A DNA stretch of 10,363 nt, taken from assembly GCF_006345805.1 (NCBI RefSeq), contig NW_021827424.1:1-10363 (forward strand), given 5' to 3'. Under the pieces are notes generated by a model. The model made no database searches, was not told the origin of the DNA, and saw only the letters and a program-made list of their open reading frames with translations. This stretch comes from Octopus sinensis (Eukaryota). Numbering within the stretch: position 1 is the first letter of the stretch; every line of letters starts with the position of its first letter. The position numbers were made by a program, and so were the translations under genes. Below, piece by piece: positions 744-10,023 of this stretch.

Positions 744-744
<1 letters not shown>

Positions 745-800
<56 letters not shown>
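745..800. repeat. (ATCT)n = (GATA)n microsatellite, 5' flank of LINE copy 1
   Basis: 14 perfect ATCT units. Confidence 0.97.
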
Positions 801-1204
<404 letters not shown>

Positions 1205-1952
1205 CGAGAAACACGGGGCCGACCTGCCCGAGATGCGGTCAGAGCGACGAAACCGTTCTGCACGCACTCGTTCAGTGTCCAACAATTTCCGACCTGTGGG
1301 CTTATGTCGAACAACTGCTGTCACGTGTGGGACGAGTCGGTTTATCAGCTGAGTCTATCGTCAATATTGTCACGCCTCCTTCCTTCAAACGGGAAGGAAG
1401 AGCTATTTTCATCATCCTTGTGGCTATGGCGAAAGAATGTATCTGGTGGACGCGTCTGAAAGGATTGGAGACAACACACTTTCTCTCTGGTCAATCTCTC
1501 ATCAACTTCTTCTTCAAGTACCACTTGAAAAGGAAAGTGAGAGTAGAGAGCAAGTTTTTGTCTAGCGAATGTTTTAAAAAAAGATGGGTGAATGTAGCAA
1601 GAATGGCACGTATGAATGACGAAGCCACCTTGAGCATAGTCCTATGAACCCAGAAATCGAAAACAGAGAGTTGCTTATTTGCAAAAAAAAAACAAAAAAA
1701 AACAAAGAAATATAAAATGTGACTTCATTGACCGAGGTTACCGTGGTCTTTTCCGCAGGCTTTTCTTTCCACGGGTAAACCTCACCTGTCCTCCCTTTAC
1801 ACTTCATATTGACATTTCTGTGATAACGATCCCTATTGATCATTTTTTTTTCCTCTCCCCCCCTTTTTTTTTTTTTTTTTTTTTAACCCCCCTTATTTTT
1901 GTCCTTTTCTCTTCTCTCCTTTTACGATCCCTTTTGATCGAACCTCCCCCTT

Positions 1953-1992
<40 letters not shown>

Positions 1993-2064
1993 CCTTCAAA
2001 AGAAAGCTCTACCTTGTAATTTGTTCTATCTGTGTGCAGCCCTGTGTGGCTAATAAAGAAACAT
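1205..2064 (+). mobile_element. 5'-truncated non-LTR retrotransposon copy 2 (L1 clade, Tx1-like): ORF2 C-terminus plus ~417-bp 3' UTR
   Basis: Starts abruptly after (ATCT)n, carries the ORF2 zinc knuckle, then a poly-T/poly-C-rich UTR, AATAAA and an (ATCT)n tail. The Tx1 subgroup call rests on remembered similarity of the C-terminal segment and is not database-confirmed. Confidence 0.85.
1207..1647 (+). pseudogene. LINE ORF2 C-terminal fragment (zf-RVT-like CCHC zinc knuckle), no start codon
   Basis: The frame of the 1327-1647 ORF stays open upstream: [50 protein letters not shown]...KKRWVNVARMARMNDEATLSIVL*. C-x2-C-x8-H-x4-C with ET-x-x-H and a downstream W is the L1/Tx1 ORF2p knuckle pattern. 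Confidence 0.88.
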
Positions 2065-2187
2065 ATCTATCTATCTATCTATCTATCTATCCATCTATCT
2101 ATCTATCTATCTATTTATTTATGTATGTCTAACTATTTGTTAGTCTGTATGTCTGTCCTCTATCTATTTCTATCTATCTATCTATCC

Positions 2188-2227
<40 letters not shown>
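2065..2227. repeat. (ATCT)n array with the duplicated 35-bp island; direct-repeat partner of ~1015-1204
   Basis: Same order of landmarks as the left flank: ATCC, 5 ATCT units, ATTT.., island, ATCT units, ATCC, ATCT units. Confidence 0.93.
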
Positions 2228-2229
<2 letters not shown>

Positions 2230-2536
2230 ATAATATATTTATCTATCTGTCTAGCTATTTGTTTCTCTCTCTCTTTCTCTATCTACCTATCTATTGATAC
2301 ACATTTATATAGACGCACACACATATACCTATATGTGTATGTACTTTTATAAGCTATTGCCAGGCAAAGGTTGACAGTTTAATAAACATTTCCTCTACTA
2401 AAATGTATCCGGTATTCCTTCAGTTTAATGTTAAATTTATTTTGTACATAACTTGACAAAAATACCAAAATTATATGCGTGCGTGTGCGTGTGTGCTTTG
2501 GTGCGTTTGCCTGCCACGTGTGTGTGTGTGTGTTTG

Positions 2537-2890
2537 TACTGGACTTGCTGCAGTCATTGAACAGCCGCCATACAGGTGCACTTCTTTGAAGGGCTTTAGT
2601 TGAATATTTTGACCCCTGTGATTATATTCAAATTTTATACTTGTCCTGTCGTCCCTTTGTGCCGAACAGTTAATGCTACGGGAGGATTGTCAATTAGTGG
2701 GGTGGGGAGGGAGGCAAACACAAACACAAACATGTATTCAGGCAGGCTTCAACAGTTTCCGTTTTAGAAATACACTCAAAGGGCATTGGTCGATACGGGG
2801 CTGTTAGAATAAAACTCTAAGGCAAAATGCCGCGCGGTGACACTGAACCCGAAACCACCTGGCTGCCAAGCGAGCTTCTTATTCACAGTG
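2537..2890 (-). mobile_element. Degenerate tRNA-derived SINE (second family, CORE-like body)
   Basis: Minus strand reads TAAGAAGCTCGCTTGGCAGCCAGGTGGTTTCGGGTTCAGTGTCACCGCGCGGCATTTTGCC...GGAAACTG...CCCGTAGCATTAACTGTTCGGCAC...GGGGTCAAA...CAATGACTGCAGCAAGT; B-box-like GGGTTCAGT; resembles an abundant octopus SINE from memory. Confidence 0.65.
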
Positions 2891-2896
2891 AAATGT

Positions 2897-2927
2897 TTAT
2901 ATATATGTGGCATATATATACATATAT

Positions 2928-2977
<50 letters not shown>

Positions 2978-2999
2978 GCATGCGTGTGTGTGTGTGTTT
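2897..2999. repeat. (AT)n/(CA)n/(GT)n compound microsatellite
   Basis: Directly visible. Confidence 0.95.
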
Positions 3000-3032
3000 A
3001 CACAGGCAGATAGACAGATAGATAGATATATA

Positions 3033-3179
3033 TTTCTTTACTACCCACAAGGGGCTAAACACAGAGGGGACAAACAAGGCAGACAAAGGGATTAAGTCGA
3101 TTATATCGACCTCAGTCCGTAACTGGTACTTATTTAATCGACCCCGAAAGAATGAAAGGCAAAGTCGACCTCGGCGGAA
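3033..3179 (-). mobile_element. 5'-truncated tRNA-type SINE with LINE-like 3' tail, followed on its strand by short (ATCT)n (3008-3028)
   Basis: Minus strand: TTCCGCCGAGGTCGACTTTGCCTTTCATTCTTTCGGGGTCGATTAAATAAGTACCAGTT...GGTCGATATAATCGACTTAATCCC...TTTAGCCCCTTGTGGGTAGTAAAGAAA; same body as the SINEs at 4111, 4348 and 5022. Confidence 0.85.
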
Positions 3180-3673
3180 GAGAGAGAAGTCTTTGCCTTC
3201 ATACGCAATTGTGGATTTGCAGTTATCTTGTAAGCCGTTGCTTCCTCCCGTAGCTTTAGATTCCTGTAATGAAGACCATAAACACCATTATGTACATATG
3301 GATATCTTCAAGTATAAACATTTGCCATTATATAATTGTGTACGTGTCTACATATGTCTTCCTATATTGCCTTTCAAACACCCTTCGCTTCTTAGCGCCA
3401 GCTTCAACTCTCTCCACTTACGTCTCCCTATTCGTCGGCCGATATCTACCTTCCTGGCTTTGGCCTTAAGCTCTGTGCTACTTACAATTCCTGGATGTAT
3501 ATATATGGTATATACAGTGTTCAGAATACTTTTACCAGATTATAAATACATGAGTGTTATTCTACAGTGGAGAGTACAGATTAAAAGAATGAAACTTTTT
3601 GAGTTATTTCCACATTTTAACACACTGTATCAAGAACTGTAATGGCAAAACTCTTTAATTTACTTCTATTAAC

Positions 3674-3719: not shown

Positions 3720-3989
3720 ATCATCAACAACCCACGAACATTACTTTCTCAAGCCATGGGGCTCATAAGAGTATTTACCGAGTTTCAACAGTTCATATGA
3801 GACCGATATTGATTACGATATTTACACCGAACGGAACGCCATTCTGTCATACGGTAAACCATTTGGACTGGAACCACATGTAATGAAGTGCTTCACTGAA
3901 AAATAAATGCACTGCCTGGCTCGGGAATCGAAACCGCGATCTTGAGATCGTGAGTGGAGCATCCAAACTCCTCGGCCACGCACTTTCAC
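3720..3989 (-). mobile_element. tRNA-derived SINE (third family)
   Basis: Pol III A-box TGGCCGAGGAG (3968-3978, minus) and B-box GGTTTCGATTCCC (3923-3935, minus) at tRNA-like spacing, followed by a non-tRNA body; 3' boundary approximate. Confidence 0.7.
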
Positions 3990-4110
3990 TTCCCAAACTT
4001 ATATATAAAAAAAAAGTGAATACCACTGAAGTGGCCGAGCAAATGAAATGACATATTCTGTGTCGCTGCCCACTAAAGGTTGACATTTTGTGTCATTCTC
4101 AACCATTATA

Positions 4111-4330
4111 AAGGCGGTGAAATGGCAGAATGGTTAGCACGCCGGACAATATGATTATCAGCATTTCGTCTGTCTTTACCTTTAAAGTCCGAATTCCGCC
4201 GAAGTCGACTTTGCCTTTTCTCATTTCAGAATCTATAAGATAAAGTAGCATTTTGTGCCCTGTGGTCGATGTATTCGACTTAACCCCCTCCTTCAAACTT
4301 ACTGGCCTTCTGATTCCATTTGAAACCATT
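4111..4330 (+). mobile_element. tRNA-derived SINE (GTCGACTTTGCC-body family)
   Basis: Head AAGGCGGTGAAATGGCAGAATGGTTAGCACGCCGG (A-box TGGCAGAATGG), body GTCGACTTTGCCTTT...GGTCGATGTATTCGACT, tail ...TTTGAAACCATT. Confidence 0.85.
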
Positions 4331-4347
4331 ATCAGAAAGCATGATAT

Positions 4348-4567
4348 GACGGCGAGGTGGCAGAATCGTTTGGACGCCGGGTAAAAAAAATCCTTAGCGC
4401 TATTTCGTCCGTCTTTATGTTTTGAGTTCAAATTCCGCCGTGATCGGCTTCGCTTTTCATCTTTCGATGTCGATAGAATAATAGCAGTTGAGAACAGTGA
4501 TCGATGCAATCGATTAGCCCCCTCCCTCCAAATTCCAGGCCTTGTGCCTATAGTAGAAAGGATTATT
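4348..4567 (+). mobile_element. tRNA-derived SINE (same family), head-to-tail with the previous copy
   Basis: A-box TGGCAGAATCG 4358-4368, B-box GAGTTCAAATTCC 4424-4436, tail CAAATTCCAGGCCTTGTGCCTATAGTAGAAAGGATTATT. Confidence 0.85.
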
Positions 4568-4800
4568 AGTAACCATTATATACTACAAAGTAATGTTGTA
4601 CGACTAAGATGGATATACTTTCAATATTTTTCAACTGGTAAAAATTAAGTAAAAATCGGGTTTCGTCGGCTGGTGAATAACCCTACTTCAAAATATGTCG
4701 TAGAACTTTTTTGGAATATCAGTCGCCCACCAGATATGAAGAAATTGATGTTTATCCTTCAATTTTGATAGATTGAGAAAGAAGACAAGTAGAGAAAGAG

Positions 4801-4996: not shown

Positions 4997-5017
4997 CATC
5001 ATCATCATCATCATCAT
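4997..5017. repeat. (CAT)n microsatellite just upstream of a SINE
   Basis: 7 CAT units. Confidence 0.9.
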
Positions 5018-5021
5018 TATT

Positions 5022-5232
5022 AAGGCGGCGAGCAAGCAGAATTGTTAGCACTCTGGACGAAATGCTTAGTGGTATTTCACCCGTCGCTAAATTCTTAGTT
5101 CAAATTCTGCCGAAGTCGACTTTGCCTTTCATCTTTTCGGGGTCCACACATTAAGTACCAGTCAAGGACTGGAGTCGATGTGATCTACTGTCTCCTTTCC
5201 CTCAAATTCCAGGCCTTGTGCCTATGAAAGAA
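5022..5232 (+). mobile_element. tRNA-derived SINE (same family) ending in an (ATT)n tail
   Basis: AAGGCGGCGAGCAAGCAGAATTGTTAGCAC...TAGTTCAAATTCTGCCGAAGTCGACTTTGCCTTTCATCTTTTCGGGGTC...CAAATTCCAGGCCTTGTGCCTATGAAAGAAATTATT. Confidence 0.87.
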
Positions 5233-5265
5233 ATTATTATTATTATTATTATATTATTATTATTA

Positions 5266-5332
<67 letters not shown>
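5233..5332. repeat. (ATT)n microsatellite (SINE tail; flank of the 558-bp element)
   Basis: Directly visible. Confidence 0.96.
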
Positions 5333-5890
5333 GAGTCAGAGAGCAATGCATGTCATCAAAGTGACACTGGGGTAAAATATACAAAGCTCAGTATACCCAT
5401 CATGACTACCCGTCTGATAAGGGTACACCAGACACATGCATCACAACCATATGTGCGCGACATGGTGATCTCATATCAAGATAAACAGCACATGACCTTG
5501 CAGTTGGGACCCAGTTAGAATTTTCTTCTGGTTGAGTAGCCCATCCCGCTCAAAAGGTCCCTGAATAAGGGTTGTTTAAGGATCTTGAACGAAACACCCA
5601 TGTTTCCAGAGGTGAATTATTCAAACCCCAAAGAATCCCTCTCAACACATGGCTATGATGCTCCCCCACTACTTCTGCTCGTGATCAGAGATGCACATAT
5701 CGTCAGCCACTAAGGGACATGCTCAACTCGTTAAGGTCAAACAACTGACAAGCAAATCTGTGGTATTGAGCAGAATATTGGCTGTAGCCCATCTTTTATA
5801 CCAAGACAAAACAATGTACATGATAACACTACCAATCAGTTAAGATCATAAGCCATGAGAGCCACTGCCTGGTACTGCATCAGGGCATTT
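5333..5890. mobile_element. 558-bp non-coding interspersed element embedded in (ATT)n/(AAT)n; probable non-autonomous retroposon
   Basis: Complex, more GC-balanced block with sharp boundaries and (ATT)n on both sides (5233-5332, 5891-5911); no ORF, no TIR; resembles a repeat I recall from octopus sequence. Orientation unproven (minus if the AAT tail follows the 3' end). Confidence 0.6.
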
Positions 5891-5942
5891 ATTATTATTA
5901 TTATTATTATTGTGGTCATTGTTGTTGTTGTTGTGTACCTTT

Positions 5943-6589: not shown

Positions 6590-7150
6590 TAAGTACTTGA
6601 TAAACACTTGCGAAACACACATACAATCCGTATTCTCTGTATTTATGCTACACTTGAATATTAGATACTTTGTAAACACTTAGAGAGCTTTAATTGCTAC
6701 TTTCTAACATTAGTACCCTATTACAGTTTCAATTTTATTCAAGCTAAACGCTTACTAAACACCTGCTAAACACACTCTTCTACTTTGTATCCGATAGAAT
6801 AATTTTTAAGCAGTTTACTATTAATTATTTTTAACATCGTTATTATTATTGTTATATCTCTCAATAACTAATTATGATCAAGCTAAACATTCGTTAAACA
6901 CTTGTTAAACAATTTCTAAACACGTAGTTACAGCCGAGATAAAACATTTATGTTGGTGTAGTGCTAGTATCGTTATCTATCACTTATTGTGTTCAGGCTA
7001 AACACTTGTGGCTAAACATGTGGTAAATAATTACTTCTCTCCAGCCGCCTTGTAAGAAGCAATTACTATTAAAGTTTAACATCGTTACAGTATTATCGAA
7101 TTATCTATAAGTTATTGTGTTCAAGAGGAACAGTTGTCGTTAAACACAGT
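6590..7150 (+). repeat. Degenerate higher-order tandem array: ~115-140 bp units containing 11-bp TAAACA(CTTG) subrepeats
   Basis: TCAAG/TCAGG anchors at 6739, 6878, 6993 and 7121; TAAAC(A/G) at 6745/6756/6767 and 6884/6895/6906/6917. Confidence 0.7.
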
Positions 7151-7369: not shown

Positions 7370-7772
7370 GGTGCCGTCTAACATCGTACCATTTCTGGCC
7401 TGAATTGCTCTTCCTGACTGCAACATATTAATCTGCCAAATACCTTGACGAAGACATTTACTTTGTTCAAGCATTCCACTCTTTCTGTCCTCAACTGCTC
7501 TTTCCTGATCAAAGGTTTACACCGTCTAACCCCGCTACTATACCGACTACAAACTTGTATTTACTGCCAAACAGCTTGACTGAGATATTTAGTTTATTCA
7601 ACCATTCTACCGTTTGTGTTCTCGACTGCTCTTTCCCGGTCAAGCGATTTAGACTGTCCAACCCCGCTACAGTAGCAACTATAAAACTTCTATTTACTGA
7701 TCAATATTCTTTCCAGCATCTCACTACTTCTTTCATCAGCTGACCTTCCTGGCACATTCAGTCTGTCTAACA
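7370..7772 (+). repeat. Degenerate ~131-bp tandem repeat (about 3 units)
   Basis: 7466-7575 aligns with 7597-7706 (TTCAA.CATTC..ACTGCTCTTTCC..TCAA..GTC.AACCCCGCTAC..AAACTT.TATTTACTG); partial earlier unit near 7426. Confidence 0.7.
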
Positions 7773-8022: not shown

Positions 8023-8911
8023 GTCTACCACAATGGTAGCCTCCGCCCTTCTCATTAGTGGGGTTTTATAAATGCTTTTTCACGGTGTTTTACGAACAAA
8101 TAAATATATATTATACTTCAAATTATTTTAATCCGAGTAATTAATTGTGCGCAGTCGTTTAATATTCATACAAAAGAAAACGAGGACTTATGTAACTAAT
8201 TATATTGGACAATAGTGCTCCATTCTCAACCGTGTTACTGCTCACTGAAAATGCAATGTACTCCTCATGTTCTCATCGCATCAAAGGAATCATTGAAGAC
8301 GTGTTTTGAAATACAGTGTATTGTACCTGATGTATATTTTATTTCTAATAAAAATCATGTAACTTCTAAACACCCAACGCTTCAATAGACCTGACTTCAT
8401 AATTGCTGCCCTCTCACGAGCTCACAACGCCAACAAGAGGGTACCACCTACCATATTAAGAATCAATGGTAAGATATCTTTCACTTTCGGTTATAAAATA
8501 CAATTTCTATAGAAAGACAATTATCCATACAACACCCAGCTATTTCTATGCTCAATTACTCCTCCTGACCAAAGTTTTCAATCTTCTAACAGACGCTATC
8601 ATCAAATGCTTTATGTAAACAAGACAATGAGCTCCTGCAACAGCCCTGAATTTATGCTATTTGTTTACCCCAAGTCAACCATCATTCTGTGTTCTTTGCA
8701 CTCAAATAAACCTCTAGATCAAGATATCGTAAGTTACAGGTGTTCCACCCAGGTGAGCGTGATAGGCCAAACCAATAAAAAACGGACAGTCTGTTTGTCA
8801 CCAACCAGTAGATATATAAGTCTCTTTTCCTTTCGTTCAACAAAAGTGTTTGGCAATTTAAGGGCCGATCGGTTGATTTTCATAATTGTCCAAGTGACTA
8901 GATTACGGCCC

Positions 8912-9116
8912 GCAACGAGTTGGCAGAATTCTTACAGCACCCACGGAAAAGCATTGCGAAATTGATCGTTCAACAAGTCCTAAGTTCGAATCTCGTCGAA
9001 GTCAATATTGAAAGATATGCGTTAGCTACGGATAAAATGAATGCCTGTCATGTACTGAGGTCTTTTTAGCTGATATTTTTCCTCACCCAACTTCAAGTCT
9101 TCATGTAATGCTCTAG
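8912..9116 (+). mobile_element. Old, degenerate SINE (same head family as 4111/4348/5022)
   Basis: GCAACGAGTTGGCAGAATTC...AAGTTCGAATCTCGTCGAAGTCAA...GATAAAATGAATGCCTGT...GTACTGAGGTC; A-box-like and B-box-like motifs; followed by (AAT)n. Confidence 0.6.
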
Positions 9117-9601: not shown

Positions 9602-10023
9602 GTGTATATCTGTGTATGTGTTTCTGTATGTATGTGTGTATGTATGTATGTATGTATGTATGTATGTATGCATGTAAGTGGGCATGTATGTAAGTATATA
9701 AATATATGAATATGTACATCCGCATATATTGACGTATATAGATGTATTTTTTGAATATACATATATGTATATATAAATGTATATATATATGTATGTATAT
9801 ATATTTATATATGTATGTGTATATATGTATATATATATATATAATATATATATATATACATATATGAAAACATATATAAATAAATATATACATATATATA
9901 TATATACACATATATTCAAATATATACATATATATACATCATATATACATATATATATAATATATATACATATATACATATATATAATACACATATATTC
10001 AAATATACATATATGAATATTCA

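What the first reader, a model, noticed from the sequence alone, without database searches (positions are those of the whole stretch)
3008..3179. SINE sharing its 3' end and its (ATCT)n flank with the Tx1-like LINE: a SINE-LINE partner pair in one window
Seen: the SINE end (reverse complement of 3033-3073) TTGTCCCCTCTGTGTTTAGCCCCTTGTGGGTAGTAAAGAAA aligns without gaps to LINE 893-933 TTGTCCTGTCTGTGTGCAGCCCTGTGTGGCTAATAAAGAAA at 33/41. On its own strand the SINE continues TATAT-ATCT-ATCT-ATCT-GTCT-ATCT. Established: many SINEs borrow the 3' end of the LINE that mobilises them (for example L2, CR1 and RTE partners), whereas mammalian L1 relies on poly-A. Inference: a tRNA-derived SINE captured the tail of a sequence-specific L1-clade LINE and inherited GATA-repeat targeting.
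Basis: partly seen in the sequence, partly recalled or inferred. Interest (0 to 1): 0.8.

Follow-up and report, generated by a model that had tools for sequence, protein, structure and literature searches.

The report
Octopus SINE carrying a LINE's tail
A short mobile element in what looks like an octopus genome ends in about 50 bases copied from the end of a nearby L1/Tx1-type LINE, with the same ATCT repeat after it. This is the usual mark of a SINE that borrows a LINE's copying machinery, so it is a real but fairly ordinary case.

Summary
The reverse complement of 3033-3073 matches LINE 893-933 at 33/41. The match extends to 41/51 with one 3-nt gap. It sits at the extreme 3' end of both elements and is far above chance: score 43 against 16.7 +/- 2.5 in shuffles, with a maximum of 33 in 5000. 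Both tails run into (ATCT)n in the same orientation.

The same body-to-tail junction recurs at 91% identity at an unrelated locus in Octopus vulgaris. It is therefore a SINE subfamily and not a one-off chimera. Other copies of the same SINE body end in a different tail plus (ATT)n, which points to a tail swap.

The LINE has a CCHC C-terminus. Its distant full-length relatives have APE + RT + zf-RVT domains, which is the L1/Tx1 architecture. Tx1 membership itself was not tested.

- Both ATCT-type SINE copies lack the tRNA-like head, and no tRNA model matches any copy.
- The two LINE 3' ends in the window are one duplicated unit, not independent insertions.
- "Inherited GATA-repeat targeting" rests on one SINE copy with ATCT only on its 3' side, and the second copy has none.

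Verdict: a plausible SINE-LINE partner pair and a new member of a known kind. Targeting of (ATCT)n is unproven.

The parts
3096..3179 (-). SINE body, 3' half only. It is 5'-truncated just after the box-B-like motif, so the tRNA-like head is absent.
   Evidence: 81% identity to the SINE copy at 5105-5189 and 76% to the copy at 4194-4287. 83-85% identity to O. vulgaris copies. Alignments.
3033..3095 (-). Subfamily-specific 3' tail. The last ~51 nt (3033-3083) are LINE-like and end in ...GTGGGTAGTAAAGAAA.
   Evidence: 33/41, 34/42 and 41/51 (plus a 3-nt gap) identities to the LINE 3' ends. Score 43-44 against shuffles of 16.7 +/- 2.5. The same tail occurs at L009 24118-24187 at 91%. It is absent from the (ATT)n-tailed copies.
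3008..3032 (-). Terminal microsatellite of the SINE copy: TATAT (ATCT)3 GTCT ATCT.
   Evidence: TRF row 3008-3032, period 4. Read directly.
1204..1646 (+). 5'-truncated LINE (piece B). The last 147 codons of ORF2 are open and carry a CX2CX8HX4C motif.
   Evidence: Translation. zf-RVT at 21.3 bits, below the Pfam cut-off of 27.5. 248 relatives; the full-length ones P0224 and P0232 have Exo_endo_phos + RVT_1 + zf-RVT.
1647..2063 (+). LINE piece B 3' UTR. It has T21 and T34 runs. The last ~55 nt (2008-2063) form the tail shared with the SINE.
2064..2294 (+). (ATCT)n array after LINE piece B, interrupted by a non-repeat island (GTATGTCTAACTATTTGTTAGTCTGTATGTCTGTC).
   Evidence: TRF. Read directly.
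803..935 (+). LINE piece A: the last ~130 nt of the same LINE 3' UTR, tail included.
   Evidence: 116/125 aligned positions identical to 1900-2063. Alignment.
936..1203 (+). (ATCT)n array after LINE piece A, with the same island and the same ATCC variant units as the array after piece B. It abuts the 5' end of piece B.
   Evidence: 857-1146 matches 1982-2294. The island region is 86/86 identical. Read directly.
744..802 (+). (ATCT)14 array directly upstream of the 5' end of LINE piece A.
   Evidence: TRF: 100% matches, 14.8 copies..
5015..5332 (+). Reference copy of the sister subfamily: full-length SINE with the other tail (...CAGGCCTTGTGCCTATGAAAGAAA) followed by (ATT)34. Further copies lie at 4104-4330 and 4345-4581.
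   Evidence: TRF row 5233-5332.

Best explanation
The piece at 3008-3179 (minus strand) is a 5'-truncated copy of a subfamily of the abundant octopus SINE. In this subfamily the last ~50-55 nt, plus the terminal (ATCT)n, have been replaced by the 3' end of an L1/Tx1-type LINE. That LINE is the family represented at 1204-2063 and 803-935, or a close relative of it.

Proposed mechanism:
1. The tail was acquired by template switching during target-primed reverse transcription. The LINE reverse transcriptase started on LINE RNA and jumped to SINE RNA. (Inferred.)
2. SINE transcripts carrying this tail are then taken as template in trans by the LINE's ORF2 protein. Recognition works through the shared 3' module, through pairing of the (AUCU)n RNA end with the nicked (AGAT)n target strand, or through both. 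(Inferred from the eel UnaL2/UnaSINE1 precedent and the Tx1-Mar/SINEU precedent.)
3. (ATCT)n would then be both the terminal repeat of the element and a favoured landing site. (Only weakly indicated here.)

Shown: the significant co-terminal similarity; the same repeat unit and orientation; recurrence of the junction at a second locus; a sister subfamily with another tail; the L1/Tx1-type C-terminus of the LINE.

Inferred: direction of transfer, trans-mobilisation, and target preference.
For: Tail similarity:
- 33/41, extending to 41/51 plus a 3-nt gap. It ends at the last base before the microsatellite in both elements. No shuffle out of 5000 reaches it, and the best score elsewhere in the window is 20.
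- Both tails are followed by (ATCT)n in the same orientation.

A subfamily rather than a single event:
- The body-plus-tail unit is found again in O. vulgaris chromosome OX597836.1 (L009 24118-24259). Identity is 90.8% over 142 nt, with different flanks on both sides.
- That copy's tail is closer still to LINE piece A, at 36/41.
- This pair is more alike than any pair of (ATT)n-type copies, which are 73-85% identical. That fits a younger subfamily.

Tail swap:
- The (ATT)n-type tails do not match the LINE significantly; 33-345 of 1000 shuffles reach their scores.

The LINE:
- Its ORF2 end is open over 147 codons with a CCHC motif.
- Relatives have APE + RT + zf-RVT.
- Both 5'-truncated LINE pieces abut (ATCT)14 at their 5' ends although they are truncated at different points.

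Literature:
- O. vulgaris has 13 recently active L1-Tx1 families and 900 mostly unclassified SINE families (PMC13282606).
- Tx1 LINEs with microsatellite targets, and Tx1-mobilised SINEs, are known (PMC4494074).
Against: - Only two copies of the ATCT-type SINE could be examined. Only one of them carries (ATCT)n, and that one has it on the 3' side only. The O. vulgaris copy runs from ...AAAGAAAT straight into other SINE fragments.
- Both copies lack the head. It is therefore not shown that this subfamily has a Pol III promoter.
- SINE and LINE tails are only ~80-88% identical, so the true donor may be another LINE subfamily.
- No stable or conserved hairpin is predicted in the shared tail. Z-scores run from -0.33 to +0.28, and the consensus energy is -0.68 kcal/mol. 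This differs from several stringent-type pairs.
- The two LINE 3' ends share their downstream flank (86/86 in the island). The window therefore gives a single independent LINE 3' junction, and the array at the 5' end of piece B is simply the downstream array of piece A.
- Two (ATCT)n arrays in L009 (7094-7161 and 15930-16011) have no LINE or SINE tail next to them.
Confidence: 0.62

Rival explanations
1. Ordinary stringent-type pair without target specificity. The (ATCT)n is only the element's own terminal repeat, made or extended by reverse-transcriptase slippage, as (TGTAA)n is in UnaL2 or (TAA)n in the I element. SINE and LINE insert anywhere, and the long arrays are later expansions of tails.
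For: The SINE copy has ATCT units only 3' of the tail and unrelated sequence at its 5' end. The array upstream of LINE piece B is the tail array of LINE piece A, and A and B are one duplicated unit. LINE terminal repeats other than poly(A) are well known (PMC3747384), and an octopus RTE has a microsatellite in its 3' UTR (PMC9115989).
Against: LINE piece A, truncated at a different point from B, also has a perfect (ATCT)14 directly at its 5' end, with unique sequence beyond it. Plain (ATCT)n arrays that could serve as targets exist elsewhere.
Confidence: 0.3
2. Not a SINE. The ~150-nt unit (SINE-like body plus tail) is the 3' end of another LINE subfamily, or of a headless non-autonomous LINE derivative, whose 3' UTR shares a module with the SINE body. 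The window copy would then be a 5'-truncated LINE fragment.
For: Both known copies start within ~10 nt of each other, just after the box-B-like motif, and neither has a head. LINE-derived middle bodies of SINEs are documented (PMC5786205).
Against: The body matches the 3' half of full-length SINE copies over its whole length, at 81-85%. The 3' UTR of the LINE in the window has no similarity to that body. An (ATT)n-type copy (L009 7349-7484) starts at the same place. That points to a common truncation point for SINE RNA rather than to a LINE origin.
Confidence: 0.12
3. One-off juxtaposition. A very short 5'-truncated LINE fragment (~55 nt plus ATCT) happened to insert next to an older, 3'-truncated SINE copy, or a single chimeric retrocopy was made by template switching and never propagated.
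For: Within the window there is only one such copy.
Against: The same junction, base for base, occurs at 91% identity at a different locus with different flanks in O. vulgaris. The SINE tail differs from both LINE copies at the same positions in both SINE copies.
Confidence: 0.04
4. Chance resemblance of two T/G-rich low-complexity stretches next to a common microsatellite.
For: The tail is pyrimidine/G-rich, and the genome is full of microsatellites.
Against: 0 of 5000 composition-matched shuffles reach the score. The best score elsewhere in the window is 20 against 43-47 for the tail matches. The match is co-terminal and has the same repeat phase and orientation.
Confidence: 0.01

Closest known systems
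UnaL2 / UnaSINE1 of the eel (Kajikawa and Okada 2002), and the general rule that SINE tails come from LINE 3' ends (Ohshima and Okada; reviewed in PMC3747384)
   Same: A short co-terminal 3' module shared by SINE and LINE, followed by the same short tandem repeat. This implies trans-mobilisation by stringent 3'-end recognition.
   Different: Those LINEs belong to the L2 clade and have a defined stem-loop. Here the LINE has an L1/Tx1-type C-terminus, and no stable or conserved hairpin is predicted. Nothing has been tested experimentally here.
SINEU mobilised by Tx1-Mar LINEs in crocodilians (Kojima 2015, PMC4494074)
   Same: A SINE inferred to depend on a Tx1-type, target-preferring LINE. The shared insertion context is used as the argument.
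   Different: SINEU has snRNA-derived heads, its target is a Mariner transposon, and no LINE matching the SINEU-1 3' half was found in Repbase. Here the argument is a shared 3' tail plus a shared microsatellite, and the target preference of the SINE is not shown.
Microsatellite-specific Tx1 LINEs: Kibi (TC)n, Koshi (TTC)n, and crocodilian Tx1 families in (TTCC)n/(TTTC)n (Kojima and Fujiwara 2004, as cited in PMC4494074)
   Same: An L1/Tx1-type LINE embedded in a microsatellite array on both sides.
   Different: The repeat unit here is ATCT. The evidence is a single locus in which the two LINE pieces are not independent. Clade membership is untested.
L1-clade stringent pairs: maize/sorghum SINEs with a monocot L1 lineage, and Chlamydomonas SINEX-3_CR with L1-1_CR (Ohshima 2012/2013, PMC3472496 and PMC3747384)
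   Same: SINEs sharing ~80 nt of 3' end with an L1-clade LINE. This shows that not all L1-type LINEs rely on poly(A) alone.
   Different: Those pairs end in poly(A), and the maize/sorghum pair has a hairpin supported by compensatory changes. This pair ends in (ATCT)n and shows no hairpin.
Bivalve HCD-tRNA SINEs that use multiple LINE partners (PMC11481361; title and abstract seen)
   Same: One SINE body combined with different 3' tails. Here they are (ATT)n-type and (ATCT)n-type, which implies partner switching.
   Different: Different host class and SINE superfamily. The partner of the (ATT)n-type tail was not identified here.

Membership tests
SINE/LINE partner pair with a shared 3' tail (stringent type) | Significant sequence similarity confined to the extreme 3' ends of both elements | tested here: met
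   33/41, 34/42, and 41/51 plus a 3-nt gap. Co-terminal. 0 of 5000 shuffles reach the score.
SINE/LINE partner pair with a shared 3' tail (stringent type) | Same terminal tandem repeat in the same orientation | tested here: inconclusive
   Met for the window copy: (ATCT)3 GTCT ATCT against (ATCT)n. The only other SINE copy available has no repeat after the tail.
SINE/LINE partner pair with a shared 3' tail (stringent type) | The tail is a property of a multi-copy SINE subfamily, not of a single locus | tested here: met
   A second copy with the identical junction at L009 24118-24259, 90.8% identical, with different flanks. Only two copies could be sampled.
SINE/LINE partner pair with a shared 3' tail (stringent type) | Conserved RNA stem-loop in the shared tail (found in several, not all, such pairs) | tested here: not met
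   Fold z-scores from -0.33 to +0.28. Consensus structure -0.68 kcal/mol with 7 weak pairs.
SINE/LINE partner pair with a shared 3' tail (stringent type) | Trans-mobilisation of the SINE by the LINE that depends on the tail | not testable with these tools
   Needs a retrotransposition assay.
tRNA-derived SINE (SINE2) | 5' head recognisable as a tRNA, with box A and box B | tested here: inconclusive
   ARAGORN finds no tRNA in the window. There is no Rfam tRNA match at E<=1 on the window or at E<=10 on 5010-5140. By eye, full-length copies carry TGGCAGAATCG (box A-like) and GAGTTCAAATTCC (box B-like). The copy in question and its O. vulgaris relative have no head at all.
Tx1 clade of L1-type LINEs | ORF2 with an N-terminal APE endonuclease, an RT domain and a C-terminal CCHC (zf-RVT-like) motif | tested here: inconclusive
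   The window holds only the last 147 codons, with CX2CX8HX4C (zf-RVT 21.3 bits, below the cut-off). Distant full-length relatives (about 30% identity) have Exo_endo_phos + RVT_1 + zf-RVT. This architecture does not separate Tx1 from other L1-type LINEs.
Tx1 clade of L1-type LINEs | RT domain groups with Tx1 references in a phylogeny (for example with RTclass1) | not testable with these tools
   The window has no RT domain and no named Tx1 reference sequences were on hand. Indirect only: L1-Tx1 is the only L1-type class listed among recently active LINEs of O. vulgaris (PMC13282606).
Microsatellite-targeting LINE (Kibi/Koshi/Waldo/Dong type) | Independent copies flanked on both sides by the same microsatellite (more than 20% of copies in Kojima's criterion, PMC4494074) | tested here: inconclusive
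   Both LINE pieces have (ATCT)n on both sides. However, they form one tandem, duplicated unit, and no other copy with a 3' end could be obtained.

The most novel reading that the evidence does not exclude
Octopus SINEs may form a modular system. One body is combined with interchangeable 3' modules, each matched to a different microsatellite-ended and microsatellite-seeking LINE. The two modules seen here are ATCT with an L1/Tx1-type LINE, and ATT with a Dong/R4-type or RTE-type LINE. The ATCT-type subfamily would then be the first tRNA-type SINE shown to share both its 3' tail and a microsatellite target with a Tx1 LINE. Such a system would help explain the SINE expansion in octopuses and the way microsatellites spread together with retroposons there.
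Probability: 0.25. Interest if true: 0.55.

Novelty: new member of a known kind. Interest (0 to 1): 0.35.

Why it matters
SINEs make up about 12% of the Octopus vulgaris genome, and nearly all of its 900 SINE families are unclassified, with no partner assigned (PMC13282606). Linking one subfamily to an L1/Tx1-type LINE through a shared tail shows which autonomous element may have driven part of that expansion. It also adds an animal example of stringent 3'-end recognition in the L1 superclade, where mammalian L1 relies on poly(A). If the (ATCT)n preference holds up, the pair would also be a source of tetranucleotide microsatellite families with repetitive flanks. That matters for marker design and for genome assembly. 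The principle itself, that SINE tails are borrowed from LINEs, has been established since the 1990s, so the gain is incremental.

Tried and rejected
Searches for more copies that gave nothing useful:
- JGI metagenome contigs with the tail pattern: 0 hits.
- JGI metagenome contigs with a SINE-core pattern: 6 hits, all 21-26-nt chance matches.
- IMG/VR with both patterns: 0 hits and 1 chance hit.
- GTDB genomes with the tail pattern: 8 chance hits in bacterial MAGs.
- Protein search with the LINE C-terminus: only two short ENA contigs, neither with a 3' end.
- Protein search with the translated SINE tail, hoping for spurious ORFs called on host-contaminated contigs: no candidate.
- Full-text search of the paper library for four sequence strings from the tail and the SINE: 0 papers.

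The one productive route was indirect.

Ideas rejected:
- The (ATT)n-type SINE tail is also LINE-derived. Not significant, although its last ~20 nt show a faint co-terminal resemblance (CCTTGTG..TA..AAAGAAAT; 17 of 1000 shuffles reach the score for one copy).
- A conserved hairpin in the tail.
- A twin-priming inversion at 3183-3206. Score 20 against shuffles of 15.7 +/- 2.1, not significant.
- The Rfam microRNA-like hits in the window. All lie in TG/TA microsatellites and far below gathering scores.

Full report
**1. What the window is**

The 10.4-kb window is non-coding, repeat-rich animal DNA.
- It holds several copies of one ~220-nt SINE: on the plus strand at 4104-4330, 4345-4581, 5015-5232 and 8905-9116, and the piece in question on the minus strand at 3033-3179.
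- It also holds many microsatellites.
- The SINE matches copies in Octopus vulgaris chromosome OX597836.1 at 73-91% identity. The window therefore comes from an octopus or a close relative.
- Published annotations say SINEs make up ~12% of the O. vulgaris genome, and that L1-Tx1, Dong-R4, RTE and CR1 LINEs have been recently active (PMC13282606, PMC8967140).

**2. Checking the observation**

The two 41-mers are exactly as quoted and agree at 33/41 positions without gaps. The SINE then continues TATAT-ATCT-ATCT-ATCT-GTCT-ATCT on its own strand.

The match is better than reported:
- 34/42 against LINE piece A (803-935).
- 41/51 plus one 3-nt gap against the 3' UTR of LINE piece B. This reaches back to TCTGCCTTG in the SINE against TCTACCTTG in the LINE.

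A local-alignment score of 43-44 compares with 16.7 +/- 2.5 for 5000 shuffles (maximum 33), and with 20 for the best match anywhere else in the window. In both elements the match ends at ...TAAAGAAA. Three to five bases later the same tetranucleotide repeat begins, in the same orientation.

**3. One event or a family?**

This was the main open point, because a ~55-nt LINE fragment landing beside an old SINE would look the same. Public metagenome, viral and prokaryote collections hold no octopus DNA. I therefore reached octopus sequence indirectly. A rhodopsin query returned the O. vulgaris protein, and its locus gave 24.3 kb of genome, L009.

L009 24118-24259 (minus strand) matches the window piece at 90.8% over 142 nt, straight across the body-tail junction. 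The flanks are unrelated on both sides.
- The two SINE tails agree with each other at most of the positions where they differ from the LINE.
- The O. vulgaris tail is closer to LINE piece A, at 36/41.
- Taking the LINE-like state wherever the two SINE copies disagree gives 35/42 (my count from the sequences).

The similarity is therefore not lost at this minimal consensus level. The tail belongs to a SINE subfamily.

**4. Tail swap**

All other copies of the same body end differently, in ...CCAAATTCCAGGCCTTGTGCCTA(G/T)AGTAGAAAGGATT followed by (ATT)n. Examples are window 5015-5332 and L009 7349-7560.
- These tails do not match the LINE significantly.
- The subfamilies diverge just after ...GGTCGATRTAATCGACTTAATCC.
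- The ATCT-type pair is more alike (91%) than any (ATT)n-type pair (73-85%), which suggests a younger lineage.

The simplest reading is that an (ATT)n-type SINE replaced its 3' module with that of the LINE.

**5. The LINE**

Piece B (1204-2063) starts abruptly after an (ATCT)n array.
- It has 147 open codons ending at 1646, with the motif C-P-R-C-x8-H-x4-C.
- Its match to Pfam zf-RVT is weak (21.3 bits, below the cut-off).
- An exhaustive HMMER search found 248 relatives, mostly short fragments. The nearest is 71% identical.
- The long relatives (P0224, 1145 aa; P0232, 1153 aa) have Exo_endo_phos + RVT_1 + zf-RVT.

This is the ORF2 architecture of the L1 superclade, which includes Tx1. I could not test Tx1 membership, because the window has no RT domain and I had no named references. 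The only indirect support is that L1-Tx1 is the only L1-type class in the published O. vulgaris table (PMC13282606).

**6. Are the LINE copies evidence for targeting of (ATCT)n?**

Only partly. The two LINE 3' ends are not independent.
- The ~250 nt downstream of each carry the same interruptions: an ATCC variant unit, then five ATCT units, then the island GTATGTCTAACTATTTGTTAGTCTGTATGTCTGTC, then a second ATCC.
- The island region is 86/86 identical in aligned positions, whereas the LINE parts are 116/125.
- The unit [LINE 3' end + flank] was therefore duplicated. The likely causes are unequal exchange within the arrays, or retrotransposition of a read-through transcript.

In favour of targeting, the two pieces are 5'-truncated at different points and each abuts a clean (ATCT)14 at its 5' end (744-802 and 1149-1204). 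The array in front of piece A is preceded by unique sequence. This is suggestive, but it is one locus.

For the SINE there is no support beyond the 3' repeat.
- The window copy has unrelated sequence at its 5' end.
- Its short ATCT run passes into (CA)n/(TA)n/(TG)n.
- The O. vulgaris copy has no ATCT at all. After ...AAAGAAAT it continues into other, oddly permuted SINE fragments.
- Two plain (ATCT)n arrays in L009 have no retroposon tail beside them.

**7. Other caveats**

- Both ATCT-type copies begin within ~10 nt of each other, just 3' of the box-B-like motif, and lack the head. One (ATT)n-type copy (L009 7349) begins at the same place. This may be a preferred stop for reverse transcriptase at the edge of the structured head. 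It also means that a Pol III-competent master copy of the ATCT-type subfamily has not been seen.
- "tRNA-derived" is not verified. ARAGORN and the Rfam tRNA model find nothing, even in full-length copies. Only box A/B-like motifs are visible.
- The shared tail is not predicted to form a stable or conserved hairpin.

**8. Comparison with what is known**

- L1-clade examples exist in maize/sorghum and Chlamydomonas (PMC3472496, PMC3747384).
- Tx1 LINEs with microsatellite targets are known: Kibi, Koshi and the crocodilian (TTCC)n/(TTTC)n families. SINEs inferred to be driven by Tx1 are also known (SINEU) (PMC4494074).
- One SINE body with several tails and partners is described in bivalves (PMC11481361).

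I found no paper that describes this octopus pair. The recent O. vulgaris repeat annotation does not contain the words "tail" or "partner", and sequence strings from the tail occur in no paper that I could search. Repbase and Dfam could not be consulted, so the consensus sequences may already be on file.

**9. Verdict**

The finding is a genuine SINE-LINE tail match and a credible partner pair, and I class it as a new member of a known kind. The attractive extra claim, that the SINE inherited targeting of GATA/ATCT repeats from a sequence-specific Tx1 LINE, remains an inference. It rests on one SINE copy and one compound LINE locus. My confidence is about 0.6 in the partner-pair reading and about 0.3-0.4 in the targeting claim.

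Noticed in passing
window 803-1203 compared with 1900-2294: The LINE 3' end plus ~250 nt of downstream (ATCT)n array, including a 35-nt non-repeat island and the same ATCC variant units, is present twice in tandem. The island region is 86/86 identical, whereas the LINE parts are 116/125. The cause could be unequal exchange within the arrays or retrotransposition of a read-through (3'-transduced) transcript.
   Followed up: partly
window 5233-5911: A ~556-nt unclassified element (5333-5888) sits between (ATT)34 and (TTA)8, directly after the (ATT)n tail of the SINE at 5015-5232. It looks like an insertion into, or next to, an (ATT)n array. This hints at a second retroposon system linked to a microsatellite (Dong/R4-like or RTE-like).
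   Followed up: no
L009 24000-24260 (minus strand): In O. vulgaris the ATCT-type SINE piece is followed directly by two further SINE fragments in permuted order: 3' part with tail, then the middle part, then the head. There is no microsatellite between them. This may be a rearrangement, nested insertions or an assembly artefact.
   Followed up: no
window 3170-3179; L009 24250-24259 and 7345-7355: Three 5'-truncated SINE copies from two subfamilies all start within ~10 nt of one another, just 3' of the box-B-like motif. This could be a preferred stop for reverse transcription at the edge of the head, or a headless sub-element.
   Followed up: partly
window about 2540-2885 (minus strand) and 3850-3990 (minus strand): Other SINE-like elements lie here, with tRNA-like box-B motifs (for example GGTTTCGATTCCCGAGCC at about 3925-3945, read on the minus strand). 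The first ends next to an (AC)n run at 2518-2537. ARAGORN calls no tRNA in either.
   Followed up: no
window 1864-1884 and 1955-1988: The LINE 3' UTR carries T21 and T34 runs on the sense strand. The second run is only T7 in LINE piece A, so its length is unstable.
   Followed up: no
window 7433-7699 and 6740-7150: There is a tandem duplication of a ~133-nt unit (7433-7566 against 7564-7699, 79% identical). There is also a region of repeated GCTAAACAC-type motifs with a 55-nt repeat (6965-7018 against 7091-7146).
   Followed up: no
window 2894-3009, 168-236, 9668-9732 and others: Rfam hits to mir-297, mir-3149 and similar families all fall in TG/TA microsatellites and far below gathering scores. 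They are low-complexity artefacts.
   Followed up: yes
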